In this document: positions 171 through 43,900 of the stretch, piece by piece
How the letters are laid out: each line of letters begins with the position of its first letter
How positions within the stretch are numbered: the first letter of the stretch is position 1
Origin: Ranitomeya imitator
Taxonomy: Eukaryota
DNA: 64,000 nt
NCBI RefSeq assembly: GCF_032444005.1
Contig: NC_091289.1
Coordinates: 12,338,001 to 12,402,000, forward strand
Direction: 5' to 3'
Position numbers and translations under genes: made by a program
The notes under the pieces: model-generated
What the model saw: the letters and a program-made list of their open reading frames with translations, nothing else
Databases searched by the model: none
What the model was told of the DNA's origin: nothing

Positions 171-4677
<4,507 letters not shown>

Positions 4678-5238
4678 CCTGAGTGTGATGTGAGCAGACA
4701 CAAGTGTGAGCCGGAGTCACAGAACTTCACTTCCTGCAGAGATAACGGCCAAAGTGAGAAGAGCAGAAGTCAGCGACCGGCACCTCCCCCACAAAACATC
4801 TATAGCATGGCACATGAAGTTATTAAAGGGGTGGTCAACATATAGGACTGGTCACATGTGCTCCATGAATAAAACATGTAGGGGACTAAGCAGTAGTCAC
4901 CGTGCCACAACCTCTGGAACATGTTTAAAGGGGTTTGTCCACTTCAAAAAATAAACTCGTACAATAGATAAGCCAATCCGCCGGCTTATCTAAAGAAATG
5001 AGCGGTCAAGCTCTTCTTAAAAATTGTCCAACCCCTTTAAAAGGGTATTTCCATCTCTTAAAGTAATGGCGTATCTACAAGGCAATAACCGAGGACTGTA
5101 CGGCCGCCTTCATTTATGGGATCTGTGAAGTCCCCAAAGGTTAAACCCCCAGTGATCGAAACATGTGAATGATTCCTACTGATCTCCCAATACTATCTGA
5201 GAAAGTAACACTGCTTTACCCAAAGCCTGGTCCCCGCA

Positions 5239-5944: not shown

Positions 5945-8140
5945 ATGTCACACAAGCTGCCCCCTCCTCCACACACAACCTGCCCCCTCCTCCACAGTAC
6001 ACACACACAAGCTGCCCCCTCCTCCACACACAACCTGCCCCCTCCTCCACAGTACAAACACACAAGCTGCCCCCTCCTCCACAGTACACACACAAGCTGC
6101 CCCCTCCTCCACAGTACACACACACACAACCTGCCCCCTCCTCCACAGTACACACACAAGCTGCCCCCTCCTCCACAGTACACACACACACAACCTGCCC
6201 CCTCCTCCACAGTACACACACAAGATGCCCCCTCCTCCACAGTACACACACAAGATGCCCCCTCCTCCACAGTACACACACACAACCTGCCCCCTCCTCC
6301 ACAGTACACACACAAGCTGCCCCCTCCTCCACAGTACACACACACACAACCTGCCCCCTCCTCCACAGTACACACACAACCTGCCCCCTCCTCCACAGTA
6401 CACACACACACAACCTGCCCCCTCGTACACACACACACACAACCTGCCCCCTCCTCCACAGTACACACACACACACAACCTGCGCCCTCGTACACACACA
6501 CACAACCTGCCCCCTCCTCCACAGTACACACACACACAACCTGCCCCCTCGTACATACACACAACCTGCCCCCTCCTCCACAGTACACACACACACAACC
6601 TGCCCCCTCCTCCACAGTACACACACACACAACCTGCCCCCTCCTCCACAGTACACACACAAGCTGCCCCCTCCTCCACAGTACACACACACACAACCTG
6701 CCCCCTCCTCCACAGTACACACACAAGCTGCCCCCTCCTCCACAGTACACACACACACAACCTGCCCCCTCCTCCACAGTACACACACACAACCTGCCCC
6801 CTCCTCCACAGTACACACACACACAACCTGCCCCCTCCTCCACAGTACACACACACAACCTGCCCCCTCCTCCACAGTACACACACACACAAGCTGCCCC
6901 CTCCTCCACAGTACACACACACACAACCTGCCCCCTCCTCCACAGTACACACACACACAACCTGCCCCCTCCTCCACAGTACACACACAGAAGCTGCCCC
7001 CTCCTCCACAGTACACACACACACACACACAACCTGCCCCCTCCTCCACAGTACACACACACACAACCTGCCCCCTCCTCCACAGTACACACACACAAGC
7101 TGCCCCCTCCTCCACAGTACACACACACAAGCTGCCCCCTCCTCCACAGTACACACACAACCTGCCCCCTCCTCCACAGTACACACACACAACCTGCCCC
7201 CTCCTCCACAGTACACACACACACACAACCTGCCCCCTCCTCCACAGTACACACACACAACCTGCCCCCTCCTCCACAGTACACACACAACCTGCCCCCT
7301 CCTCCACAGTACACACACACAACCTGCCCCCTCCTCCACAGTACACACACACACACAACCTGCCCCCTCCTCCACAGTACACACACACAACCTGCCCCCT
7401 CCTCCACAGTACACACACACACAACCTGCCCCCTCCTCCACAGTACACACACACACAACCTGCCCCCTCCTCCACAGTACACACACACAACCTGCCCCCT
7501 CCTCCACAGTACACACACACACAACCTGCCCCCTCCTCCACAGTACACACACAGAAGCTGCCCCCTCCTCCACAGTACACACACACACAAGCTGCCCCCT
7601 CCTCCACAGTACACACACAGAAGCTGCCCCCTCCTCCACAGTACACACACACACAAGCTGCCCCCTCCTCCACAGTACACACACACACAACCTGCCCCCT
7701 CCTCCACAGTACACACACACACAACCTGCCCCCTCCTCCACAGTACACACACAGAAGCTGCCCCCTCCTCCACAGTACACACACACACACAACCTGCCCC
7801 CTCCTCCACAGTACACACACACACAACCTACCCCCTCCTCCACAGTACACACACACAAGCTGCCCCCTCCTCCACAGTACACACACAACCTGCCCCCTCG
7901 TACACACACACACAACCTGCCCCCTCCTCCACAGTACACACACAGAAGCTGCCCCCTCCTCCACAGTACACACACACACACAAGCTGCCCCCTCCTCCAC
8001 AGTACACACACACAAGCTGCCCCCTCCTCCACAGTACACACACAACCTGCCCCCTCGTACACACACACACAACCTGCCCCCTCCTCCACAGTACACACAC
8101 ACAACCTGCCCCCTCCTCCACAGTACACACACAACCTGCC
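5945..8140. repeat. About 30-bp minisatellite with variable (AC)n spacer, about 70 copies, in TPRA1 intron 1
   Basis: Unit AACCTGCCCCCTCCTCCACAGT(AC)n; explains six overlapping nonsense ORFs. Confidence 0.97.
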
Positions 8141-8280
8141 CCTTCCCTGCCCCCCACCTCAGCCCTCTGTGCACCCTCTTATACCGCCTGTATTCGCCCC
8201 GCTTTCCTCTGCTCCCATCGCCGTCTCCAGTGCCTCCTGTGCCCCCTCTCCCGCCCCGCTTCCCTCCTGTGCCCGGTTAC

Positions 8281-8420
8281 CTCTCATGGAGCCGCCCGCA
8301 GTCCGCCGCTCTCGCCCGCTGGTAGCTGCGCTCCTCTGTTTTGGTCTGGCCGCGATCGATGACTCCGCGCTCTGCCAGGATCCCCGCGGGCTGAGCGCCG
8401 AGCGATGGATGGGCGGAGCC
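8281..8420 (-). other. TPRA1: Putative non-coding exon 1 of TPRA1 (5' boundary approximate)
   Basis: CpG-rich island (about 8180-8500) with a donor-like GAG|GTAACC whose GT is at 8280-8279, next to promoter motifs. No transcript evidence. Confidence 0.55.
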
Positions 8421-8443
8421 TGGAGAGCAGTCACGTGACGTGA
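8411..8443. promoter_or_regulatory. TPRA1 proximal promoter motifs: GC box, palindromic E-box/CLEAR GTCACGTGAC, overlapping CRE-like TGACGTGA
   Basis: GGGCGG at 8411-8416, GTCACGTGAC at 8430-8439 and TGACGTGA at 8436-8443, inside a CpG island. Confidence 0.6.
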
Positions 8444-8940
8444 GACTCCGCAGCGCCGCCGGCCGGCCGGACCCGGAGCGTGCGACATTCCGCTGATCTG
8501 TGCGACATTACTGGATCTGTGCAACAGATGTCGAACGTAAAAGTTTAAGTTTAGTTTATTTATATCAGTGTTTTTTTTGTGTCGTCGTTTTCTTCCCTTT
8601 CCGCCGCTGGCCCTGTGTGTGTGTTCCAAGTGTCAGTTTTTATTTTTCTTTAGGGGGAGGAGAGGGTTAAATAGAACTTTTTTTTCTAGCGTTTCCCCGT
8701 CCTGCTACCAGGGATCCGTGTGTGAACCCGGACTACGGGGCGTCGCCACAGAATTTGTTTTTTTTTTTAAAAATAAAGAAATAAACATTGCTGCGTTATT
8801 CATGCGTTTTTTTCTCTGCCAAAATTGCTGCAAAGCATTTAGGGAGGAAAAAAAACAAACAAAAAAAACAAATAAAAATCATATGAGTGAAGCGGAGGGA
8901 GATTCGACCTGCTTAGTTTCCTAGTCCTGACAAAGGGGCG

Positions 8941-11900
8941 TGGCTCAGGGTGACAGACACGCCCCCAGTGTGGCTCAGGGTGACAGACACGCCCCCAGTG
9001 TGACTCAGGGTGACAGACACGCCCCCAGTGTGGCTCCGGGTGACAGACACGCCCCCAGTGTGGCTCCTGGTGACAGACACGCCCCCAGTGTGGCTCAGGG
9101 TGACAGACACGCCCCCAGTGTGACTCAGGGTGACAGACACGCCCCCAGTGTGGCTCAGGGTGACAGACACGCCCCCCAGTGTGACTCAGGGTGACAGACA
9201 CGCCCCCAGTGTGACTCAGGGTGACAGACACGCCCCCAGTGTGGCTCAGGGTGACAGACACGCCCCCAGTGTGGCTCAGGGTGACAGACACGCCCCCAGT
9301 GTGGCTCCGGGTGACAGACACGCCCCCAGTGTGGCTCAGGGTGACGGACACGCCCCCAGTGTGGCTCAGGGTGACAGACACGCCCCCAGTGTGGCTCCGG
9401 GTGACGGACACGCCCCCAGTGTGGCTCCGGGTGACGGACACGCCCCCAGTGTGGCTCAGGGTGACAGACACGCCCCCAGTGTGACTCAGGGTGACGGACA
9501 CGCCCCCAGTGTGGCTCAGGGTGACGGACACGCCCCCAGTGTGACTCAGGGTGACAGACACGCCCCCAGTGTGACTCAGGGTGACAGACACGCCTCCAGT
9601 GTGGCTCCGGGTGACAGACACGCCCCCAGTGTGACTCAGGGTGACAGACACGCCCCCAGTGTGGCTCAGGGTGACAGACACGCCCCCAGTGTGGCTCCGG
9701 GTGACAGACACGCCCCCAGTGTGACTCAGGGTGACAGACACGCCCCCAGTGTGGCTCAGGGTGACAGACACGCCTCCAGTGTGGCTCCGGGTGACAGACA
9801 CGCCCCCAGTGTGACTCAGGGTGACAGACACGCCCCTAGTGTGGCTCAGGGTGACAGACATGCCCCCAGTGTGGCTCCGGGTGACAGACACGCCCCCAGT
9901 GTGGCTCCGGGTGACGGACACGCCCCCAGTGTGGCTCCGGGTGACAGACACGCCCCCAGTGTGGCTCCTGGTGACGGACACGCCCCCAGTGTGGCTCAGG
10001 GCGACGGACACGCCCCCAGTGTGGCTCAGGGTGACAGACACGCCCCCAGTGTGGCTCCGGGTGACGGACACGCCCCCAGTGTGGCTCCGGGTGACAGACA
10101 CGCCCCCAGTGTGGCTCCTGGTGACGGACACGCCCCCAGTGTGGCTCAGGGCGACGGACACGCCCCCAGTGTGGCTCAGGGTGACAGACACGCCCCCAGT
10201 GTGGCTCAGGGTGACAGACACGCCCCCAGTGTGGCTCAGGGTGACAGACACGCCCCCAGTGTGGCTCCGGGTGACAGACACGCCCCCAGTGTGGCTCAGG
10301 GTGACGGACACGCCCCCAGTGTGGCTCAGGGTGACAGACACGCCCCCAGTGTGACTCAGGGTGACAGACACGCCCCCAGTGTGACTCAGGGTGACAGACA
10401 CGCCTCCAGTGTGGCTCCGGGTGACAGACACGCCCCCAGTGTGGCTCCGGGTGACGGACACGCCCCCAGTGTGGCTCCGGGTGACGGACACGCCCCCAGT
10501 GTGGCTCCTGGTGACGGACACGCCCCCAGTGTGGCTCCGGGTGACGGACACGCCCCCAGTGTGGCTCCGGGTGACAGACACGCCCCCAGTGTGGCTCCTG
10601 GTGACGGACACGCCCCCAGTGTGGCTCAGGGTGACGGACACGCCCCCAGTGTGGCTCCGGGTGACAGACACGCCCCCAGTGTGGCTCAGGGTGACGGACA
10701 CGCCCCCAGTGTGGCTCAGGGTGACAGACACACCCCCAGTGTGGCTCCGGGTGATGGACACGCCCCCATTGTGGCTCAGGGTGACGGACACGCCCCCAGT
10801 GTGGCTCCGGGTGACAGACACACCCCCAGTGTGGCTCCTGGTGACAGACACGCCCCCAGTGTGGCTCCTGGTGACAGACACGCCCCCAGTGTGGCTCAGG
10901 GTGACAGACACGCCCCCAGTGTGGCTCAGGGTGACAGACACGCCCCCAGTGTGGCTCCTGGTGACAGACACGCCCCCAGTGTGGCTTCGGGTGATGGACA
11001 CGCCCCCAGTGTGGCTCCTGGTGATGGACACGCCCCCAGTGTAGCTCAGGGTGACAGACACGCCCCCAGTGTGGCTCAGGGTGACAGACACGCCCCCAGT
11101 GTGGCTCCTGGTGACAGACACGCCCCCAGTGTGGCTCCTGGTGACAGACACGCCCCCAGTGTGGCTCCTGGTGACAGACACGCCCCCAGTGTGGCTCCTG
11201 GTGACAGCCACGCCCCCAGTGTGGCTCAGGGTGACAGACACGCCCCCAGTGTGGCTCCTGGTGACAGACACGCCCCCAGTGTGGCTCCTGGTGACAGACA
11301 CGCCCCCAGTGTGGCTCCTGGTGACAGACACGCCCCCAGTGTGGCTCCTGGTGACAGACACGCCCCCAGTGTGGCTCCTGGTGACAGACACGCCCCCAGT
11401 GTGGCTCCTGGTGACAGACACGCCCCCAGTGTGGCTTCGGGTGATGGACACGCCCCCAGTGTGACTCAGGGTGACAGACACGCCCCCAGTGTGGCTCCTG
11501 GTGACAGACACGCCCCCAGTGTGACTCAGGGTGACAGACACGCCCCCAGTGTGGCTCCTGGTGACAGACACGCCCCCAGTGTGGCTCCTGGTGACAGACA
11601 CGCCCCCAGTGTGGCTCAGGGTGACAGACACGCCCCCAGTGTGGCTCCGGGTGACAGACACGCCCCCAGTGTGGCTCCTGGTGACAGACACGCCCCCAGT
11701 GTGACTCAGGGTGACAGACACGCCCCCAGTGTGGCTCCTGGTGACGGACACGCCCCCAGTGTGGCTCCTGGTGACAGACACGCCCCCAGTGTGGCTCCTG
11801 GTGACAGACACGCCCCCAGTGTGGCTCCTGGTGACAGACACGCCCCCAGTGTGGCTCAGGGTGACAGACACGCCCCAGTGTGGCTCCTGGTGACAGACAC

Positions 11901-13675
11901 GCCCCCAGTGTGGCTCCTGGTGACGGACACGCCCCCAGTGTGGCTTCGGGTGATGGACACGCCCCCAGTGTGGCTCAGGGTGACAGACACGCCCCCAGTG
12001 TGGCTCCTGGTGACAGATACGCCCCCAGTGTGGCTCCTGGTGACAGACACGCCCCCAGTGTGGCTTCGGGTGATGGACACGCCCCCAGTGTGGCTCCGGG
12101 TGACGGACACGCCCCCAGTGTGGCTCCTGGTGACAGACACGCCCCCAGTGTGGCTCCTGGTGACAGACACGCCCCCAGTGTGGCTCCTGGTGACAGACAC
12201 GCCCCCAGTGTGGCTCCTGGTGACAGACACGCCCCCAGTGTGGCTCAGGGTGACAGACACGCCCCCAGTGTGGCTCAGGGTGACAGACACGCCCCAGTGT
12301 GGCTCCTGGTGACAGACACGCCCCCAGTGTGGCTCCTGGTGACGGACACGCCCCAGTGTGGCTTCGGGTGATGGACACGCCCCCAGTGTGGCTCAGGGTG
12401 ACAGACACGCCCCCAGTGTGGCTCCGGGTGACAGACACGCCCCCAGTGTGGCTCCTGGTGACAGCCACGCCCCCAGTGTGGCTCCTGGTGACAGACACGC
12501 CCCCAGTGTGGCTCCTGGTGACAGACACGCCCCCAGTGTGGCTCAGGGTGACAGACACGCCCCCAGTGTGGCTCCTGGTGATGGACACGCCCCCAGTGTG
12601 GCTTCGGGTTATGGACACGCCCCCAGTGTGGCTCCGGGTGACAGACACACCCCCAGTGTGGCTCCTGGTGACAGACACGCCCCCAGTGTGACTCAGGGTG
12701 ACAGACACGCCCCCAGTGTGGCTCCTGGTGACGGACACGCCCCCAGTGTGGCTCCTGGTGACGGACACGCCCCCAGTGTGGCTCCTGGTGACAGACACGC
12801 CCCCAGTGTGGCTCCTGGTGACAGACACGCCCCCAGTGTGGCTCCTGGTGACAGACACGCCCCCAGTGTGGCTCAGGGTGACAGACACGCCCCCAGTGTG
12901 GCTCCTGGTGACAGACACGCCCCCAGTGTGGCTCCTGGTGACAGACACGCCCCCAGTGTGACTCAGGGTGATAGACACGCCCCCAGTGTGGCTCCTGGTG
13001 ACGGACACGCCCCCAGTGTGGCTCCTGGTGACAGACACGCCCCCAGTGTGGCTCCTGGTGACGGACACGCCCCCAGTGTGGCTCAGGGTGACAGACACGC
13101 CCCCAGTGTGGCTCAGGGTGACAGACACGCCCCCAGTGTGGCTCAGGGTGACAGACACGCCCCCAGTGTGGCTCCTGGTGACAGACACGCCCCCAGTGTG
13201 ACTCAGGGTGATAGACACGCCCCCAGTGTGGCTCCTGGTGACGGACACGCCCCCAGTGTGGCTCCTGGTGACAGACACGCCCCCAGTGTGGCTCCTGGTG
13301 ACGGACACGCCCCCAGTGTGGCTCAGGGTGACAGACACGCCCCCAGTGTGGCTCAGGGTGACAGACACGCCCCCAGTGTGGCTCAGGGTGACAGACACGC
13401 CCCCAGTGTGGCTCAGGGTGACAGACACTCCCCCAGTGTGGCTTCGGGTGACGGACACGCCCCCAGTGTGGCTCCTGGTGACGGACACGCCCCCAGTGTG
13501 GCTCCTGGTGACAGACACGCCCCCAGTGTGGCTCCTGGTGACAGACACGCCCCCAGTGTGGCTCCTGGTGACAGACACGCCCCCAGTGTGGCTCCTGGTG
13601 ACAGACACGCCCCCAGTGTAGCTCAGGGTGACAGACACGCCCCCAGTGTGGCTCCGGGTGATGGACACGCCCCCA
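8941..13675. repeat. 30-bp tandem array, about 158 copies, between the TPRA1 and MCM2 promoters
   Basis: Unit GTGACAGACACGCCCCCAGTGTGGCTC(AGG/CGG/CTG); 240-bp higher-order duplication at 12961-13200 and 13201-13440. Confidence 0.98.
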
Positions 13676-13866
13676 CAGAATCCCGTATAGTCTATAACGC
13701 TAGAACCTTCTGTGAATTGAAACTTGCATTGGGGGCATGCTGGGAGTTGTAGTGTCTCCGCCGCCGGAGTTCAGCTCCCTGACATAGCTCCATCTACACA
13801 AACCGCAGCAGTTTTTTTGCTGAATCCAATCCAAAAAAAATCGCGACACAAACGCTATCTCTCTAT

Positions 13867-14058
13867 GGCTGCGGTCACACTAGCAGTATTTGGTCAGTAT
13901 TTTACCTCAGTATTTGTAGCTAAAACCAGGAGTGGGTGATAAATACAGAAGTGGTGCATGTTTCTATTATACTTTTCCTCTACTTGTTCCACTCCTGGTT
14001 TTGGCTACAAATAATGATGTAAAATACTGACCAAATACTATATAGTGTGACGGCAGCC
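13867..14058. mobile_element. MITE, PIF/Harbinger (Tourist)-like
   Basis: TIRs GGCTGCGGTCACACTA and TAGTGTGACGGCAGCC (1 mismatch); 3-bp TSD TAT at 13864-13866 and 14059-14061; long internal inverted symmetry. Confidence 0.85.
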
Positions 14059-14079
14059 TATCACAGCAATGATCCCAAC

Positions 14080-14280
14080 GCCCCGCCCACCTGCAGCGTT
14101 ACTCCGCCTCTTATTACCAGATCACTCACTTATTCAGAAGCCGTATTACCCCGCCTCCTTGTAATGACCAATTGGAAGCCCGGAGGTTGCGAGGGCCCGC
14201 CCTTGAGAAGGCGGAGTTTATGCAAACGAAGATATTTTCGCGGGCTTGAGCGGGTCATGTGGTATTTTCGCGCCAAACTG
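14080..14280 (+). promoter_or_regulatory. MCM2 promoter with GC boxes, CCAAT and two E2F sites
   Basis: CCCCGCCC near 14081; CCAATTGG at 14168-14175; TTTTCGCGGG at 14235-14244; TTTTCGCGCCAAA at 14265-14277, about 60-100 bp upstream of the ATG. MCM genes are established E2F targets. Confidence 0.8.
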
Positions 14281-14333
14281 CGGGCAGGAGAAAGCGAGAA
14301 GTGTGTGAGCGGAGAGTCCGGAGCAGCAGCGAC

Positions 14334-23136
<8,803 letters not shown>

Positions 23137-28975: not shown

Positions 28976-31900
28976 GTAAGATCTGCTTCGTTCTGGCACT
29001 GACATGGCAGCGGCGGGTCGTGTCGCAGTGTCTGACACCAGGCATGCTATTTTAAAAATTCATGCAGCAAAGGGAGGGCACGTCTCACAATGGCACCTTG
29101 GGTACTGTCCAGAGGCAGCCTGCCAGCCCAGCCCTGAAATCTATATATATACAGTATATAGAGGCCATTGTGTCCCGCAGCGTCTGCCACTTTAATTAGA
29201 TTGCAAGCTCTTTGGCCCGGCAGACGAGCCCGTCTGCTTTATTTGGCACACGTCTTCCTGCTTGAGAAACGCTCTCAGAAAATGTAATGAGATTAGGGAT
29301 CTGTCGCGGCTGCGAGACATTCATCACACTAAACAGGCCCCCGAGGATCACATCACTAATTTAGTAATGTGTCTGCGTGACCCCGACGCGCGTCCTCCCA
29401 TCAGGGGGTGTAACGCCGCTTCTGTAATTGAGAACGACTGCTTTCTTGGACGCAGATTGTAGTTGTTAGTCTTTAACCAATTACTCCCTCCAACCGCCAT
29501 ATATAGCACGAGCGAAGGGGGCAATCTACCTAGCGCCTCCACCATACCGCCCCCCTCCATTGTCTAAACTTGTGGTGTTGGCGGTGGTAATATTTTAGAA
29601 ATACATATCGTAACGGTGGTATTAATAAGACACTGTGGCGGTATTATTTATGTACTATAAGGCTGTCATGTGGCATTATAGAACAATCCTTTATTCTTAA
29701 AGGGGTTGTCCCATAAACAATGTACATAATCTGTGTTGTAGATAAATGTATGATCCTCTGGGACCCCCAGTAATCCCAAGACTAGGGTCCTAAAGTCCCC
29801 TTGTGAATGCAGTGATGCAGAACATGCCCTCTACCACTCCATGCACACAGAGGATTTTGAGCCCCCCATTGTCAGAATTCAACATCTATTTTCTGTGATT
29901 AGGTGATAAATGTGCTTTATGGAACAACCCCTTTAATATGATTTTCCCTTTAACTACATCTTTGGATATAGTGAAATAAAAATCCATTATTCTTTATGTG
30001 ACTGACAATTTGGGGTTCACACCGGGACTAAAATGCATTAGTTTGTTATCGAGTAGAATGCTGGGAGTTGTAGTTTGTCAACAGTTACATACTAGTGTCT
30101 ACGGGTTCTGACCAGCCGGGTCTCTGTCCGCAGGGTTCTCCTGCTTCCTCCTGGCCGCCTGCGAGGACCCCCATACAGAAGGACTCTCCTCCACATCTCT
30201 GCTGGACGTGTCATTGTCCAATCTGGAGAGCGTGGATTCCGGCGAGCGCGGCGCTGACGGTTACCCAGATACCGACTTTCGGCACAACCTCCTCCATACA
30301 CCTCAGGGCTCTGGATTTTCCAGCCAAGAGACAGAAGAAATCTCCATTTTTCAGTCACCAAAATATTTCTGGGATGATGAAGTGAAGAAATCGAATGACA
30401 GCGAAGATCAAAGCAGAAGTCAGACAGGTAAAAGCGGAGACCCCCATATCCTGCACATTGTGCCTAATGCTTAAAGGTTGAGTGACGTGTCCATCAAATG
30501 TACGGCTAGATAGGTGGGGACTGAATCTGGGAACAACTGATACCTGGGAAATGTGTGTGTGCCATGCTGAAAGCAACATATATAAAATAGAATCATTCTA
30601 CATAGTTAGTAAATATACTACATTACTTTTCCTCGGGAGCTGCACTCACTATTCTGCTGGTGCAGTCACTGTGTACATACATTACATTACTGATCCTGGA
30701 GTTACCTCCTGTATTATACTCCAGAGCTGCACTCACTATTCTGCTGGTGCAGTCACTGTGTACATACATTACATTACTGATCCTGAGTTACATCCTGTAT
30801 TATACTCCAGAGCTGCACTCACTATTCTGCTGGTGCAGTCACTGTGTACATACATTACATTACTGACCCTGAGTTACATCCTGTATTATACCCCAGAGCT
30901 GCACTCACTATTCAGCTGGTGGAGTGACTGTGTTAAAAAAAATAGCAAAATTGTAGGTGTAGCTTTCAAATATAATAAGAATAAGTAATGTATGTACACA
31001 GTGACTGCACCAGCAGAATAGTGAGTGCAGCTCTGGAGTATAATACAGGATGTAACTCAGGATCAGTAATGTAATGTATGTACACAGTGACTGCACCAGC
31101 AGAATAGTGAGCGCAGCTCTGGGGTATTATACAGGATGTAACTCAGGATCAGTAATGTAATGTATGTGCACAGTGACTGCACCAGCAGAATAGTCAGTGC
31201 AGCTCTGGGGTATAATACAGGATGTAACTCAGGATCAGTAATGTAATGTATGTACACAGTGACTGCACCAGCAGAATAGTGAGTGCAGCTCTGGAGTATA
31301 ATACAGGATGTAACTCAGGATCAGTAATGTAATGTATGTACACAGTGACTGCACCAGCAGAATAGTGAGTGCAGCTCTGGAGTATAATACAGGAGGTAAC
31401 TCAGGATCAGTAATGTAATGTATGTACACAGTGATTGCACCAGCAGAATAGTGAGTGCAGCTCTGGAGTATAATACAGGATGTAACTCAGGATCAGTAAC
31501 GTAATGTATGTACACAGTGACTGCATCAACAGAATAGTGAGTGCAGCTCTGGAGTATAACACAGGATGTAACTCAGGATCAGTAACGTAATGTATGTACA
31601 CAGTGACTGCACCAGCAGAATAGTGAGTGCAGCTCTGGAGTATAATACAGGATGTAACTCAGGATCAGTAATGTAATGTATGTACACCGTGACAGCACCA
31701 GCAGAATAGTGAGTGCAGCTCTGGAGTATAATACAGGATGTAACTCAGGATCAGTAATGTAATGTATGTACACAGTGACTGCACCAGCAGAATAGTGAGC
31801 GCAGCTCTGGAATATAATACAGGATGTAACTCAGGATCAGTAATGTAATGTATGTATATAGTGACTGCACCAGCAGAATAGTGAGTGCAGCTCTGGAGTA

Positions 31901-34900
31901 TAATACAGGAGGTAACTCAGGATCAGTAATGTAATGTATGTACACAGTGACTGCACCAGCAGAATAGTGAGTGCAGCTCTGGAGTATAATACAGGATGTA
32001 ACTCAGGATCAGTAATGTAATGTATGTACACAGTGACTGCACCAGCAGAATAGTGAGTGCAGCTCTGGAGTATAATACAGGAGGTAACTCAGGATCAGTA
32101 ATGTAATGTATGTACACAGTGATTGCACCAGCAGAATAGTGAGTGCAGCTCTGGAGTATAATACAGGAGGTAACTCAGGATCAGTAATGTAATGTATGTA
32201 CACAGTGACTGCACCAGCAGAATAGTGAGTGCAGCTCTGGAGTATAATACAGGAGGTAACTCAGGATCAGTAATGTATGTGCACAGTGACTGCACCAGCA
32301 GAATAGTGAGCGCAGCTCTGGAGGATAATTCAGAATAAGTAATTTGTGTAGAGATGTTTGTATAGTATTCATCTCGCAGTAACATTGTGTCTGGAGTGTG
32401 GGGGGCATACATTGCAGTGTGTTATATACTATGTGGGGTGGTCTGTGCTATCACATCTGCTTTTATTGGAGGTGACGTGGCTGCATGATGAGACCATTGT
32501 GTAATTCATGGTCTTCACCTCTGACTCTTTCAGTCTTGAGTAAATAATTCTCAATTACTGTTTATATAAAAAAAATCTTTCTAATGTTCTTTTTGTTTTT
32601 TATTTTTACCACTGTAAGTTCTCTGCTTGGTGTCAGTGAATAGATAAAACCTTGTTTATATCCAGAAGCCGAAAACTTTTGAACACCAAACCTTTTTCTC
32701 ACTTGTTACAATTGTCTCCTGCCTAAAAAATAATCTTCAGTAAACGAAATAGTTTGGACACAAAACTAATACAATGTATCAGTGCAGGGGAAAAATGTAA
32801 CAAACTATCAGGGCAGGAGATATCAGCTCAGCTCATGAATTCTTCTCTACATTGTAACAAACCCTCATCTCTGAAAGATATAAAAATGGGTTTACGCCCC
32901 TCAGATGTAAAAAATAGAAGATCATATGTTATTTCCTCCACAGATGGACCAGATACCACGCATATCTATGGTGTTAACCAAGAAGAGACCACAGATCGCA
33001 GCAGCAGTTTACCTAAAGAAATCGTGGAAACGTCTACAACGTTGTGGTCTACGGACATCGATGGGTCCTCCAAACTATCATCTCCAAGCACCAAGATCCC
33101 AGAAGAAGAAAACACCATCAAAGCAACAGCCCAGAATGCGAGGATAGCACCATTTCCAAATATCGAGGATAGGACACTTTCCAAGCTGGTGGTCTCTACT
33201 ACTGTGCACCCAACGGCCAAACCTTCCAGGAAGAACAGGAAACATTCATGGTCCAAAAACCATCATGGAAACCACAACCACGAGTCAAACACCCGGCCTG
33301 GACCTCCAGCTGATTCACGGGGGCTTCCAGCAGGACATTCCCGTCACGGACCTGGATATCATGAAGATGAAGGCCAAGCAACCCAGTCATTGCATATTGT
33401 CAGTGAAGAAGGGAAAATTAGGTTCTCTACCCAACGAGATGAATATTTGACCAAGGCAGTGGTCCCCAGCGAGGTATCGGTGGCGTCACATCAGGTTCGG
33501 CCGGGCAGTGAACGCTCTATTGTTTCTTGAGCACTGGAATCACAGTTGTAGGATTTGGGGTACAGTGAGTGATGACGAGCCATAATGTTCACTGGGCCAT
33601 AAAAGCTAAATATATTGTTAAATGTCATTCTCAGATCAGATCTCAAGTCTGAGGTCCGGCTAGCCCACCAGAGGGAGGACCTTCTGGAGATACCAGGTCC
33701 TCAGTAATAGTGCAGAGCTGGGGGTTACTTCCTAAATATTCCTTATAGTTCCATGTTTGCAGCGCTGGTCTTACCATACTGTCTGGTGTGTGAGCTCCTT
33801 TAAGGTGTTACCGCACTTCTTTATTTTCGAGGACTTGTTACATTTACCATTTTTATTTCCAGGTAATCTGCAAGGATTGGATTAATCTGGCCGGAAAGAA
33901 CTATGTTATACTGAACATGTCGGATGATATTGACTGCGTGAGTACCGTGTAGTTTTCCGAAACGTCATCATTCTTATTCTGAACCCGGAGCTGAACGCGG
34001 CCTGATGCTTGCAGTGAACAAGGGGGTCTTTAGGGTCCTCGGCTTCAGCCCCAAAATCAGTATTTAAAAGGGTTTTCCAACTTCATAAAATAACCTGTTT
34101 CCTGGCTGCAATTTCTTAAAATAAAAAAAAAAATAATAAAAAAAAAAAAGAGCTTTGCTCACCCTCCCCAGGTCCAGGGCTGAGACTGCGCTACTGCTCC
34201 CAGTATACGTGATTGTGAGCTCAGCGGCTCTGCCCGAGTTGACGGCACAATGCCGCTCAGAGCCGCCAAGCTCACTGATTGACTGCAGCGCTTTTGTCGT
34301 GATGTCAGCGCTGCAGACAATAACAGGCACCGGGAACAGCGGGGAGCCTCAACGTTGGACCTGGAGAGGGTGAGTTGAGAATAGTTTTGTTTTTTTTTTC
34401 ATTTTTAAACAAACTGCAGGTGAAGGACGTGAGTTTTCTGAAAGTGGAAAACCCCTTTAAATAGTACTCCGACTGTACTAAAGTGGTTGGTAAAGGAACG
34501 GTCGCTTCCAGCCTTTACTGAGGTAAGCATTGGCCGCCATTATTCCCCATTAAATGGCTTTATCGTTGTATTTTAATGCAATGGACTTGGATAAAGACGA
34601 TGTCCAATATTTACATTTCCTGCAGGGGTGGTACTATAACTCCCAGCATGTTTTGATAGATCGCTCCACAGGATGCGTTTCCTCCAGAGACCAGTGGTGG
34701 CGGCTTTACACCACTCCATCCAACGCTCGACATTGTGCTTGGTGATGTACGGCTCATAAACTCACGCCACGAAGCTTTTGGCCTCCATTGGGCCGGTATA
34801 CCTTTCCATTCAGCTGTTTCAAGCAGCGTGGTTGCAGTAGACATTTTTTTTTTTTTTTTTACATGGGGGCCTGTGGACGACATACGCACAACAGGTAGCG

Positions 34901-40900: not shown

Positions 40901-43900
40901 ATGCCTGGGCTGACCGGGTGGGCGTCCTCTCTTGGCAGGTTTGTTGTGGTGCCATGTTTTATGTTTTTTTTTTTTTTTAATTCAGGACAATGGATTTGTT
41001 GGTGTTTGGGGGATCGTCACAGATTGGGAAATTTTCTTATATTGCAACCCTGACTAGTACTTCTCTACAACTTTGCCCCTGACTTGTTTGGAGATCTCCT
41101 TGGTCTTCATGGTGTTGTTTTGAGATCTCATTGGTCTTCATGGTGTTTGGAGATGTCCTTGGTCTTCATGGTGTTGTTTTGAGATCTCCTTGGTCTTCAT
41201 GGTGTTTGGAGATGTCCTTGGTCTTCATGGTGTTGTTTTGAGATCTCCTTAGTCTTCATGGTGTTGTTTGCCGATCTCCTTGGTCTTCAAGGTGTTATTT
41301 GGAGATCTCCTTGGTCTTCATGGTGTTGTTTGGAAATCTCCTCGGTCTTCATGGTGTTTTTTGGAGATCTCATTGGTCTTCATGGTGTTGTTTGGAGATC
41401 TCCTCGGTCTTCATGGTGTTTTTTGGAGATCTCCTTAGTCTTCATGGTGTTGTTTGGTGATCTCCTTGGTCTTCATGGTGTTGTTTGGAGATCTCATTGG
41501 TCTTCATGGTGTTGTTTGGAGATCTCCATGGTGTTGTTTGGAGATCTCCTTGGTCTTTATGGTGTTTGGAGATCTCCTCGGTTTTTATTGTGTTTGGAGA
41601 TCTCCTCGGTCTTCATGGTGTTGTTTGGAGATCTCCTTGGGCTTCATGGTGTTTGGAGATGTCCTTGGTCTTCATGGTGTTGTTTGGAGATCTCATTGGT
41701 CTTCATGGTGTTGTTTGGAGATCTCCATGGTGTTGTTTGGAGATCTCCTTGGTCTTTATGGTGTTTGGAGATCTCCTCGGTATTTATTGTGTTTGGAGAT
41801 CTCCTCGGTCTTCATGGTGTTGTTTGGTGATCTCCTTGGTCTTCATGGTGTTGTTTGGAGATCTCCTTGGTGTTCATGGTGTTGTTTGGAGATCTCCATG
41901 GTGTTGTTTGGAGATCTCCATGGTGTTGTTTGGAGTTCTCCTTGGTCTTTTTTGTGTTTGGAGATCTCCTCGGTCTTCATGGTGTCTGATTAGCGGAGCC
42001 TCTTATTAATGATGTTGCAGCCTCTGTGGCCTTTCAGAGATGGTAAAGTGCATATACTGACAGACATGTGACACTTAGATTGCACACTGGTGAACGTCCT
42101 GTCACTAAGCATTGGAATTATGAAGGTAATTGCTTGCACCACAAAGTTTTAGGGGCTTCATAGCAAAAGGGGTGAACATATATGCACATGCCAATTTTTA
42201 GTTATTTGATTCCATGAATTTAATTTACGTTTAGATTTTTCTCACTTCCCCAGTTTAGACTATTTAGTGCTGATGCATCACACACAAATCAGATTACAAA
42301 AATATTTAAACACAGGTGGTAGTATAACAAAATAAAAAAAAGCCAAGGGGGTGAATACATTCACATGTCACTGTATTATACACAGCAAAGTAATGGACAC
42401 ATCTGAACCTTTCCATACATGCAACTATTAAGATAAACGATCATAGTAAAAAAATAATGTTACCGTATTACGGAACATTGTGTGTCTGCGGCATTATATA
42501 ATACTGATGTAACTTCAAGATGAACAAACAACAGAAATAAAATAATCAACTGTTCTCACTATTCTACAGATTGGTATTGAGAGTTACTCCAGCACCGCGA
42601 GCTGTCAGTCCCGGCCCAGCCCTCCCCGCAGCGATTACGGCAAACTCTTCATTGTTTTGGTCATTATCGGATCCATTTGTGTTATGATCATCATTGCAGG
42701 ACTCATATATATCTGCTGGCAGAAACGACTACCAAAACTGAAAAATATGGTGAGAAAAGCAGAGAACATAACGAGAAACTTATAGAATAATGGTCCTTAG
42801 TAGTGATGAGCGATGTACTCGTTGCTCGGGTTTTCCAGAGCACGCTCTGGTGGTCTCCGACTAATTGTTGGTGCTCGGAGATTAAGTTTTCATTGCAGCA
42901 GCTGAATGATTTACAGCTACTAGCCAGGCTAAGTGCATGTGGGGGTTGCCTGGTTGCTAGGGAATCCCCACATGTAATCAAGCAGGCTAGTAGCTGTAAA
43001 TCATTCAGCTGCTGCAATTAAAACTTAATCTCCGAGCACCAACAAATAGTCGGAGACCACCCGAGCGTGCTCTGGAAAACCCGAGCAATGAGTACACTCA
43101 CTCATCACTAGTCCTTATATTCTTGTACATAGGGGCAGTATTATAGTAGTTATATTCGTGTACATAGGAGCAGTATTATAGTAGTTATATTCTTGTACAT
43201 AGGGGCAGTATTATAGTAGTTATATTCTTGTACATAGGATCAGTATTATAGTAGTTATATTCTTGTATATAGGAGCAGTATTATAATAGTTATATTCTTG
43301 TACATAGGGGCAGTATTATAGTAGTTATATTCTTGTACATAGGGGCAGTATTATAGTAGTTATATTCTTGTACATAGGGAGCAGTATTATAGTAGTTATA
43401 TTCTTGTATATAGAGGGCAGTATTATAGTAGTTATATTCTTGTACATAGGGGCAGTATTATAGTAGTTATATTCTTGTACATAGGAGCAGTATTATAGTA
43501 GTTATATTCTTGTATATAGAGGGCAGTATTATAATAGTTATATTCTTGTACATAGGGGCAGTATTATAGTAGTTATATTCTTGTACATAGTGGGCAGTAT
43601 TATAGTAGTTATATTTTTGTATATAGGATCAGTATTATAGTAGTTATATTCTTGTACATAGGATCAGTATTATAGTAGTTATATTCTTGTACATAGTGGG
43701 CAGTATTATAGTAGTTATATTCTTGTACATAGGATCAGTATTATAGTAGTTATATTCTTGTACACAGAGGCAGTAATATAGTAGTTATATTCTCGTACAT
43801 AGGAGCAGTATTATAGTAGTTATATGCTTGTATATAGGAGCAGTATTATAGTAGTTATGTTTTTGTGTGTTGAGTGTTTTGCCTGTTGCTGACACATCCT

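What the first reader, a model, noticed from the sequence alone, without database searches (positions are those of the whole stretch)
8935..13675. Head-to-head TPRA1/MCM2 promoters separated by about 158 copies of a motif-dense 30-mer that appears to have grown from a GC-box
Seen in sequence: about 5.9 kb separate the putative TPRA1 exon 1 from the MCM2 ATG, and 4.7 kb of that is one 30-bp array. Every unit contains CACGCCCCC (SP/KLF-type), and most contain TGACAG (TALE/MEIS-type) overlapping CAGAC (SMAD element). The left edge is a perfect GGGGCGTGGC (8935-8944) that is inverted relative to the first unit's CACGCCCC (8958-8965), which looks like the seed hairpin. Variants are polarised: CAGG/CCGG on the left, CCTG on the right, with a 240-bp higher-order repeat near 12961-13440. 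Established: TPRA1 and MCM2 are divergent neighbours in human. Inference: a native promoter element was amplified into a VNTR that uncoupled a compact divergent promoter. Each side now has its own CpG island and motif set (CLEAR/E-box versus E2F). Copy number could tune expression of a replication-licensing gene.
Basis: partly seen in the sequence, partly recalled or inferred. Interest (0 to 1): 0.72.

Follow-up and report, generated by a model that had tools for sequence, protein, structure and literature searches.

The report
Large minisatellite between TPRA1 and MCM2 promoters
A real 4.7-kb tandem repeat of 158 thirty-base units separates the start regions of two neighbouring frog genes (TPRA1 and MCM2), but it looks like one of many ordinary unstable repeats in a repeat-rich region, and neither its origin from a promoter element nor any effect on the genes is shown.

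Summary
There are 157.9 copies of a 30-bp unit at 8940-13675. Variants are polarised, and one 240-bp block is duplicated. MCM2 lies on the + strand and a TPRA1-family gene on the - strand, head to head, each beside its own CpG island.

- 56% of the window is tandem repeat, and three further unrelated minisatellites border the same two CpG islands.
- The unit has no significant likeness to either flank.
- The "seed hairpin" is marginal (z -1.8).
- The array is CpG-depleted (o/e 0.41 against 0.94-0.95 in the islands), so it does not look like protected promoter DNA.
- I found no transposon ends and no other copy in the window.

Best reading: a locally arisen VNTR-type minisatellite of a recombination-prone frog region that passively spaces two promoters. 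It is a new member of a known kind. This scan has noted other motif-bearing minisatellites beside promoters elsewhere in this genome (mimic poison frog), but not this 30-mer.

The parts
8940..13675 (.). 30-bp minisatellite, 158 units, consensus GTGGCTCCGGGTGACAGACACGCCCCCAGT
   Evidence: TRF; unit parse; core pattern 154 matches against 0.01 expected
8935..8944 (+). GC/GT-box-like decamer GGGGCGTGGC across the left junction (5 flank bases plus the first 5 bases of unit 1); inverted relative to CACGCCCC at 8958-8965
   Evidence: sequence; inverted repeat I4; hairpin -11.5 kcal/mol, z -1.8
12928..13407 (.). 8-unit (240 bp) block present twice in tandem inside the array
   Evidence: block APDADBBB at units 134 and 142
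9901..10200 (.). 5-unit (150 bp) block present twice in tandem inside the array
   Evidence: block FCDJB at units 33 and 38
8281..8440 (-). putative non-coding TPRA1 exon 1: donor GAG|GTAACC (GT at 8280-8279 on the - strand) and a palindromic CLEAR-type E-box GTCACGTGAC at 8430-8439. The TSS is inferred, not shown.
   Evidence: sequence; CpG island; downstream Tmemb_40 exons
8200..8800 (.). CpG island on the TPRA1 side (8150-8520: GC 0.68, o/e 0.95)
8521..8934 (.). AT-rich spacer (GC 0.39) between the TPRA1 island and the array.
13676..13866 (.). unique right flank. It holds a ZNF143/THAP11 (SBS)-type motif ACTACAACTCCCAGCATGCC at 13734-13753 on the - strand, 59 bp from the array.
   Evidence: 2 matches in the window, 0 expected; flank unique in the window
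13867..14058 (.). MITE-like hairpin element (51-nt inner arms and 16-nt outer arms, both 94% complementary)
14061..14334 (+). MCM2 core promoter and CpG island: GC boxes, CCAAT, and E2F-type sites TTTTCGCGGG (14236-14245) and TTTTCGCGCC (14266-14275) on either side of GTCATGTG
   Evidence: sequence; o/e 0.94; module conserved in L014:381-424
14335..14340 (+). coding part of MCM2 exon 1 (ATG TCG), followed by the donor gtgagc
   Evidence: the same layout (ATGGCG|gtgagt) in L014
14457..16071 (.). 32-bp minisatellite (50 copies) in MCM2 intron 1, starting 117 bp after the exon-1 donor
   Evidence: unrelated to the 30-mer
16280..16670 (.). 33-bp minisatellite (11 copies) in MCM2 intron 1
5970..8146 (.). 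34-bp minisatellite (68 copies) in the presumed TPRA1 intron 1, ending 135 bp from the exon-1 donor
16974..23133 (+). MCM2 coding exons 2 to the last (15 exon segments mapped)
171..4716 (-). TPRA1-family (Pfam Tmemb_40) coding exons. The first coding exon is about 4510-4677. Profile positions 3-50, 86-125 and 176-216 follow in colinear order.

Best explanation
The 30-mer array is a locally arisen, GC-rich minisatellite (VNTR type) in the spacer between the TPRA1 and MCM2 promoters of the mimic poison frog.

How it most likely grew (inferred): one 30-bp stretch was duplicated, and the array then expanded by replication slippage and unequal exchange or gene conversion. These are the processes proposed for the many minisatellites of recombination-rich frog chromosome regions.

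Its shown effect is structural. The two CpG-island promoters, each complete with its own motifs, now lie about 5.8 kb apart.

The SP/KLF-like, TGACAG and CAGAC strings are simply part of whatever 30 bases were amplified. The array is probably methylated and transcriptionally passive. Any effect on MCM2 or TPRA1 would come through spacing, not through 145 working binding sites.
For: Shown:
- Head-to-tail 30-bp units, 94% alike, with sharp borders.
- Interspersed variants with polarity, plus two multi-unit block duplications. This is the footprint of unequal exchange.
- 56% of the window is tandem repeat.
- Three further arrays of 32-34 bp with unrelated units border the same two promoters.
- No other copy of the unit in the window. 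No terminal inverted repeats between the flanks. The flanks are unique in the window. No Rfam or tRNA match.
- CpG o/e is 0.41 in the array against 0.95 and 0.94 in the islands. The commonest variants at unit position 15-16 are CpG to CpA or TpG.
- Array units fold no better than shuffles (z +0.9 and +1.9).

From the literature:
- PMC10794172: frog extended subtelomeres are dense in satellites. Recombination correlates with satellites (r 0.68). The authors propose expansion by unequal crossing over. Amphibians lack prdm9.
- PMC8096271: human minisatellite VNTRs are enriched within 1 kb upstream of genes and at CpG islands.
Against: - The junction decamer GGGGCGTGGC completes an 8-bp stem with the first unit, which needs exactly GGGGC in the flank (about 1 in 1000 at that spot, judged after the fact).
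- A second inverted look-alike of the unit core lies 54 nt beyond the right end.
- The CpG within CACGCC is kept in about 149 of 154 full-length units while the other two CpG positions vary. Selection or hypomethylation could also explain that.
- Locus-uniqueness in the whole genome was not tested.
- Small runs of 60-135 Mb hold 5-13% of the stretch's words. That could mean the unit is more abundant genome-wide than this one array suggests.
- Whether this window lies in a high-recombination region is unknown.
Confidence: 0.6

Rival explanations
1. A native SP/KLF GC-box of an ancestral compact bidirectional promoter was amplified, seeded by a hairpin. The array now works as a homotypic binding-site cluster or insulating spacer whose copy number tunes MCM2 and/or TPRA1.
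For: - GGGGCGTGGC at the left junction, inverted to the unit core.
- CACGCCCCC in 145 of 158 units, with its CpG largely kept.
- Promoter-type motifs on both sides of the array: a CLEAR-type E-box on the left; an SBS-type motif and E2F sites on the right.
- A human CpG probe shared by MCM2 and TPRA1 suggests close promoters there.
- VNTR units with factor sites can affect expression (PMC8096271).
Against: - The hairpin is not better than 10 of 200 shuffles.
- No unit-like remnant in either flank (p 0.09-0.99).
- Array CpG o/e is 0.41, unlike the two islands.
- The motifs are short, and the unit core matches the KLF consensus only 7 of 8 (consensus from memory).
- Many unrelated arrays in the same window need no such explanation.
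- No binding, chromatin or expression data.
Confidence: 0.12
2. The 30-mer is a dispersed satellite or the cargo of a transposon, as with the Helitron-borne 27-mer in this same window, and landed between the promoters by insertion.
For: - Earlier notes on this genome describe Helitron, piggyBac and Harbinger elements that carry minisatellites.
- The array has sharp borders.
- Runs under another species label, and very small runs, hold 5-13% of the words. That is close to the share of distinct 31-mers occurring at least 5 times in the array (9.4%).
Against: - No copy of the unit elsewhere in 64 kb.
- No terminal inverted repeats (best 10 nt, within the shuffle range).
- The flanks do not match the window's Helitron ends or anything else in the window.
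- No called protein made of the repeat in public assemblies (a weak test) and no match in metagenome contigs (not informative for frogs).
Confidence: 0.15
3. The array is not intergenic. TPRA1 transcription starts to the right of it, near the SBS-type motif beside the MCM2 promoter as in a classic bidirectional promoter, so the array lies in a TPRA1 5' intron.
For: - An SBS-type promoter motif on the - strand lies 59 bp right of the array.
- TPRA1 exon 1 at 8281-8440 is inferred without RNA.
- First introns of both genes already hold arrays.
Against: - A strong CpG island with a good donor and an E-box lies at 8200-8800.
- The right flank 13676-14060 has low GC (0.43) and o/e 0.62.
- By eye (inference, no tool), only a weak donor-like site (AG|GTTCTA) is on its - strand (sequence).
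Confidence: 0.08
4. The copy number or the array itself is an assembly artefact.
For: Long arrays of near-identical units are error-prone to assemble.
Against: - DNA runs of the same species hold 38-48% of the sampled words of the stretch.
- The ordered variant map with polarity and block duplications is not what a collapsed or inflated assembly usually gives.
Confidence: 0.05

Closest known systems
Promoter-proximal human minisatellite VNTRs (for example INS VNTR, MAOA 30-bp uVNTR, the CSTB upstream repeat; class described in PMC8096271)
   Same: Tandem GC-rich units of 10-40 bp just upstream of a gene. The units carry factor-type motifs, variants are interspersed, and growth is by slippage or unequal exchange.
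   Different: Far longer here (158 copies, 4.7 kb). It lies between two divergent promoters. Polymorphism, factor binding and any expression effect are all untested. The named human examples are from my own knowledge, except CSTB.
Subtelomeric and recombination-associated minisatellite expansions of frog genomes (Bredeson et al. 2024, PMC10794172)
   Same: Dense, unrelated minisatellite arrays in GC-rich DNA of a frog. The proposed driver is unequal crossing over in a prdm9-less genome.
   Different: The chromosomal position and recombination rate of this window are unknown. The tetramer enrichment reported there is only weak here (ACAG 15.2 against 11.1 per kb). No transposon source of the unit was found.
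Vertebrate bidirectional (head-to-head) CpG-island promoters
   Same: Divergent orientation of TPRA1 and MCM2, with promoter-type motifs (E-box, SBS-type, GC boxes, CCAAT, E2F) on either side.
   Different: The inferred starts are about 5.8 kb apart, in two separate islands. The usual criterion (under 1 kb, one shared island) is not met in this frog.
Transposon-borne minisatellites of this same genome
   Same: A kb-scale array of a 27-35-bp unit with sharp borders.
   Different: No transposon termini, target-site features or second copies were found for the 30-mer.

Membership tests
Minisatellite / VNTR | Head-to-tail tandem units of about 10-100 bp forming an array of 0.5-30 kb | tested here: met
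   Period 30, 157.9 copies, 4736 bp
Minisatellite / VNTR | Interspersed variant units and multi-unit duplications (the signature of unequal exchange or conversion) | tested here: met
   29 variants, polarity, and 8-unit and 5-unit block duplications
Minisatellite / VNTR | Copy number varies among individuals | not testable with these tools
All listed runs are kept as contigs.
Bidirectional promoter | Two divergent genes, head to head | tested here: met
   TPRA1-family exons on the - strand, MCM2 on the + strand
Bidirectional promoter | Transcription starts less than about 1 kb apart within one shared CpG island | tested here: not met
   The inferred starts are about 8440 and 14290. There are two islands, separated by a 4.7-kb array with o/e 0.41. 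The starts themselves rest on sequence features, not RNA.
CpG island (applied to the array itself) | GC at least 0.5-0.55 and CpG observed/expected at least 0.6 over 200 bp or more | tested here: not met
   GC 0.67 but o/e 0.41 overall. 200-bp bins give 0.28-0.63.
Transposon-borne or dispersed satellite | Element termini (TIRs or Helitron ends) around the array | tested here: not met
   Best inverted match between the flanks is 10 nt, within the shuffle range. No likeness to the window's Helitron ends.
Transposon-borne or dispersed satellite | Further copies of the unit at other loci | tested here: inconclusive
   None in the 64-kb window. None among called proteins or metagenome contigs. The frog genome itself could not be searched.
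Homotypic SP/KLF binding-site cluster | Repeated matches to the factor consensus | tested here: met
   CACGCCCCC in 145 of 158 units. This is string matching only, with the consensus from my own knowledge.
Homotypic SP/KLF binding-site cluster | Factor occupancy or open, unmethylated chromatin | not testable with these tools
   No chromatin, methylation or binding data. CpG depletion argues indirectly against a protected state.

The most novel reading that the evidence does not exclude
In this prdm9-less frog, meiotic recombination centred on CpG-island promoters systematically throws off kb-scale minisatellites right beside promoters. Four unrelated arrays border the two islands here. One of them has split an ancestral shared TPRA1/MCM2 promoter, leaving the E-box island on one side and the SBS-type and E2F elements on the other. 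Promoter architecture in such genomes would then be remodelled by repeat growth.
Probability: 0.2. Interest if true: 0.55.

Novelty: new member of a known kind. Interest (0 to 1): 0.3.

Why it matters
If the ordinary reading holds, this is a well-resolved example of how minisatellite growth can push two divergent promoters kilobases apart without damaging either core promoter. That is useful for annotating repeat-rich amphibian genomes but not surprising.

It would matter more in two cases:
- The array proves polymorphic and its length tracks expression of MCM2, a replication-licensing gene.
- Promoter-flanking arrays prove to be a genome-wide by-product of promoter-centred recombination in prdm9-less vertebrates. 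Long-read assemblies, read-level methylation and population data could test this directly.

Tried and rejected
So there is no depth, RNA starts or cross-species laying.

2. Dispersal through translated repeats. A profile of the five open frames of the array found nothing, although it scores its own members at 96-137 bits. The test is weak because short-read contigs collapse such arrays.

3. Orthologous loci.
- The spliced MCM2 model was not joined; exons were searched one by one.
- The representative search with one exon returned mostly exon-sized fragments and arthropod-like full-length proteins.
- Alignments of a catfish MCM2 with the frog exon pieces (A2, A3) were misaligned and not used.
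- Exon-2 look-alikes led to frog contigs under 1.2 kb that stop in intron 1 (L007, L015, L016).
- One fish-like contig reaches the promoter (L014).
- L008-L013 are from a mammal whose protein differs from the human chain at several residues, so I do not take them for human. L002-L006 look sauropsid by their exon-2 peptide (my own judgement). I used neither set beyond an exon match.

4. An exact-product look-up of a flank ORF found nothing on record.

5. Likeness of the unit to the other arrays: none (p 0.07-0.89).

6. Tetramers reported for Xenopus subtelomeric repeats: only a weak excess here.

I replaced it with coordinates taken from ungapped tblastn.

8. Chromosomal position of the window could not be obtained.

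9. A paper search for TPRA1 + MCM2 + bidirectional found none.
Full report
**The observation**

Tandem Repeats Finder reports one array at 8940-13675 with period 30, 157.9 copies, 94% matches and no indels. Parsing it in register gives 158 units (154 of 30 nt) in 29 variants. The five commonest variants make up 110 units.
- CACGCCCCC is present in 145 of 158 units, TGACAG in 114 and CAGAC in 111.
- The 21-nt core occurs 154 times with up to 3 mismatches against 0.01 expected, always inside the array.
- CAGG and CCGG units dominate the left half and CCTG units the right half (Mann-Whitney on unit index p 1.7e-7; units are not independent events).
- The '240-bp higher-order repeat' is an 8-unit block present exactly twice in tandem (12928 and 13168). 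A 5-unit block is likewise doubled at 9901 and 10051.

**The genes**

MCM2 lies on the + strand.
- A ruler of 15 exon segments from 16974 to 23133 matches MCM2.
- One exon hits the Pfam MCM P-loop domain at E 2e-40.
- Exon 2 matches solved Xenopus mcm2 best (8q6o, E 2e-23).
- Exon 1 is ATGTCG followed by gtgagc at 14335-14346. It sits behind GC boxes, a CCAAT box and two E2F-type sites (14236-14245 and 14266-14275) either side of GTCATGTG.
- A fish-like public contig (L014) has the same module, TTTCGCGGGC ... GGGTCACGTG ... TTTCGCGC, and the same two-codon first exon. The MCM2 core promoter assignment therefore rests on conservation, not only on motif spotting.

A TPRA1-family gene lies on the - strand.
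- Three exon ORFs match Pfam Tmemb_40 in colinear order: profile positions 3-50 at 3561-3851 (E 1e-13), 86-125 at 1312-1494 (E 0.022, below Pfam's cut-off of 25 bits) and 176-216 at 171-485 (E 3e-8).
- A podocalyxin-family exon follows MCM2 at 42546-42782. This gives the order TPRA1-MCM2-PODXL2, which I recall from human 3q21.
- The first coding TPRA1 exon is near 4510-4677 and has no CpG island in front of it. The only island on that side is at 8200-8800, with the donor GAG|GTAACC and GTCACGTGAC.
- TPRA1 exon 1 at about 8281-8440 is therefore a reasonable inference, but it is not shown.

**The surroundings**

Tandem repeats cover 56% of the window. Besides the 30-mer, three arrays lie directly beside the two promoters:
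- a 34-mer (68 copies, 5970-8146) ending 135 bp from the putative TPRA1 exon-1 donor;
- a 32-mer (50 copies) starting 117 bp after the MCM2 exon-1 donor;
- a 33-mer (11 copies) further into intron 1.

Their consensus units are no more like the 30-mer than shuffled units are (p 0.07-0.89). The two promoter blocks are true CpG islands (GC 0.68 with o/e 0.95; GC 0.59 with o/e 0.94). The array has GC 0.67 but o/e only 0.41. Its commonest internal differences at unit position 15-16 are CG to CA (113 units) or TG (12 units), the products expected of methylated CpG. The direction of change cannot be proven. Rfam and tRNA scans of 8789-17000 are empty.

**Did it grow from a GC-box?**

Only five flank bases (GGGGC) contribute to the junction decamer; the rest is the start of unit 1.
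- The resulting hairpin has an 8-bp stem, -11.5 kcal/mol and z -1.8. 10 of 200 shuffles fold as well.
- Array units themselves fold worse than shuffles.
- Local alignment of a unit dimer to 150-190 bp of either flank, both strands, gives p 0.99 (left) and 0.09 (right) against dinucleotide shuffles. So there is no decayed proto-unit beside the array.
- The right flank does hold a 13-nt inverted look-alike of the unit core. This overlaps a ZNF143/THAP11 SBS-type motif, ACTACAACTCCCAGCATGCC, at 13734-13753 (two such motifs in the window, none expected).

That motif, 59 bp from the array, means promoter-type elements lie on both sides of the array. This fits an old shared promoter that was split, but it does not show it. 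A human methylation study lists one promoter CpG probe under both MCM2 and TPRA1 (PMC7865606), which indirectly supports close divergent promoters in human. A search for papers naming both genes with 'bidirectional' found none.

**Is it dispersed or transposon-borne?**

Earlier notes on this genome, which they call the mimic poison frog, describe transposons that carry minisatellites. One is a Helitron in this very window. I therefore looked for element ends.
- The best inverted match between the flanks is 10 nt, inside the shuffle range.
- The flanks match nothing else in the window.
- By eye, the flanks do not resemble the Helitron's ends.
- A profile of all open reading frames of the array found no called protein in 5.8 billion clusters. 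The profile would have scored such a protein above 90 bits, but short-read contigs collapse such repeats, so this is weak.
- A metagenome scan was empty and says nothing about frogs.

The frog genome itself could not be searched. The run index leaves an open point. Same-species DNA runs hold 38-48% of the sampled 31-mers. Runs under another species label hold 8-9%, and some runs of only 60-135 Mb hold 5-13%. 9.4% of the distinct 31-mers of the stretch occur five or more times in the array, so those shares could be array words in a relative. They could equally be conserved exon and promoter words, or RNA of the two first exons.

**Other species**

The only routes to orthologous DNA were protein look-ups.
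- Exon-sized queries returned exon-sized fragments on short contigs.
- The three frog-like exon-2 contigs are 956-1178 bp and end in intron 1.
- L014 (fish-like) reaches 360 bp upstream of the E2F sites and shows no significant likeness to the TPRA1 island.
- Contigs L008-L013 come from a mammal whose MCM2 N-terminus differs from the human chain at several residues. L002-L006 look sauropsid by their exon-2 peptide (my own judgement). I used neither set beyond the exon match.

The key comparison, spacer length and presence of a proto-unit in other frogs, therefore remains undone.

**How it most likely works**

The anatomy is that of a minisatellite: sharp borders, an ordered variant map, polarity and block duplications. 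The setting matches what Bredeson et al. describe for frogs. There, dense satellite arrays lie in recombination-rich, GC-rich regions, the authors propose expansion by unequal crossing over, and prdm9 is absent (PMC10794172). I could not determine whether this window lies in such a region, and the tetramer enrichment they report is only weak here. In human, minisatellite VNTRs are enriched within 1 kb upstream of genes and at CpG islands, and some affect expression through factor sites in the units (PMC8096271). So a promoter-adjacent, motif-bearing VNTR is a known kind of thing.

My best reading (0.6) is a locally arisen, probably methylated and passive minisatellite. Its shown effect is to hold two otherwise complete CpG-island promoters about 5.8 kb apart. 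The rivals:
- a working SP/KLF site cluster or tuner (0.12);
- a dispersed or transposon-borne satellite (0.15);
- an array that actually lies in a TPRA1 5' intron because TPRA1 starts beside MCM2 (0.08);
- an assembly artefact (0.05).

**Verdict**

This is a new member of a known kind, of modest interest. This scan has noted similar motif-bearing minisatellites beside promoters at other loci of this genome (STX4, IST1, GID4/ATPAF2 and a ZNF143-motif array beside a bidirectional promoter). Those notes are unchecked by me. If they hold, the pattern of arrays bordering promoters may be more interesting than this single array.

Noticed in passing
window 13734-13753 (-) and 30055-30074 (-): Two ZNF143/THAP11 SBS-type motifs sharing the 17-nt core ACTACAACTCCCAGCAT (20-nt pattern, 1 and 2 mismatches); none expected by chance. 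The first lies 59 bp right of the array. The second lies ahead of the podocalyxin-like exons, without a clear CpG island.
   Followed up: partly
window 13867-14058: A MITE-like hairpin element (51-nt inner arms and 16-nt outer arms, both 94% complementary) sits about 180 bp upstream of the MCM2 E2F sites. No second copy in the window.
   Followed up: partly
window 14236-14275 and L014:381-424: The MCM2 core module (E2F site, GGGTCAYGTG E-box-like, E2F site) and the two-codon first exon are conserved between this frog and a fish-like contig.
   Followed up: yes
window 5970-8146, 14457-16071, 16280-16670: The first introns of both genes are largely filled by unrelated 32-34-bp minisatellites that begin or end 117-135 bp from the exon-1 donors. 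With the 30-mer, four arrays border two CpG islands.
   Followed up: partly
window 3786-4354 (+) and 30637-32333 (opposite orientation): The same 86-bp satellite unit occurs in a TPRA1 intron and again downstream of MCM2 in inverted orientation. So, unlike the 30-mer, some arrays of this window are dispersed.
   Followed up: no
window 8469-8520: A short imperfect direct repeat (tgtgcgacatt..., about 20 bp, 2.5 copies), seen by eye, just upstream of the putative TPRA1 exon 1.
   Followed up: no
window 8842-13770 (-): The array is open in five of six reading frames. The longest is a 1643-codon ORF on the - strand. A gene caller could mistake it for a repetitive protein; no look-alike protein is on record.
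   Followed up: yes
L007, L015, L016 (frog-like MCM2 exon-2 contigs): All public short-read contigs of frog MCM2 exon 2 that I could fetch end within about 110-430 bp upstream of exon 2. This may reflect repeats in intron 1 of those species too, or just low coverage.
   Followed up: no
window 42546-42782 (+) and 32727-33527 (+): A CD34/podocalyxin-family transmembrane exon (42546-42782) and a long serine/threonine-rich ORF (32727-33527, no Pfam match) lie downstream of MCM2. This fits PODXL2 and conserved gene order with human; the human order is from memory.
   Followed up: partly
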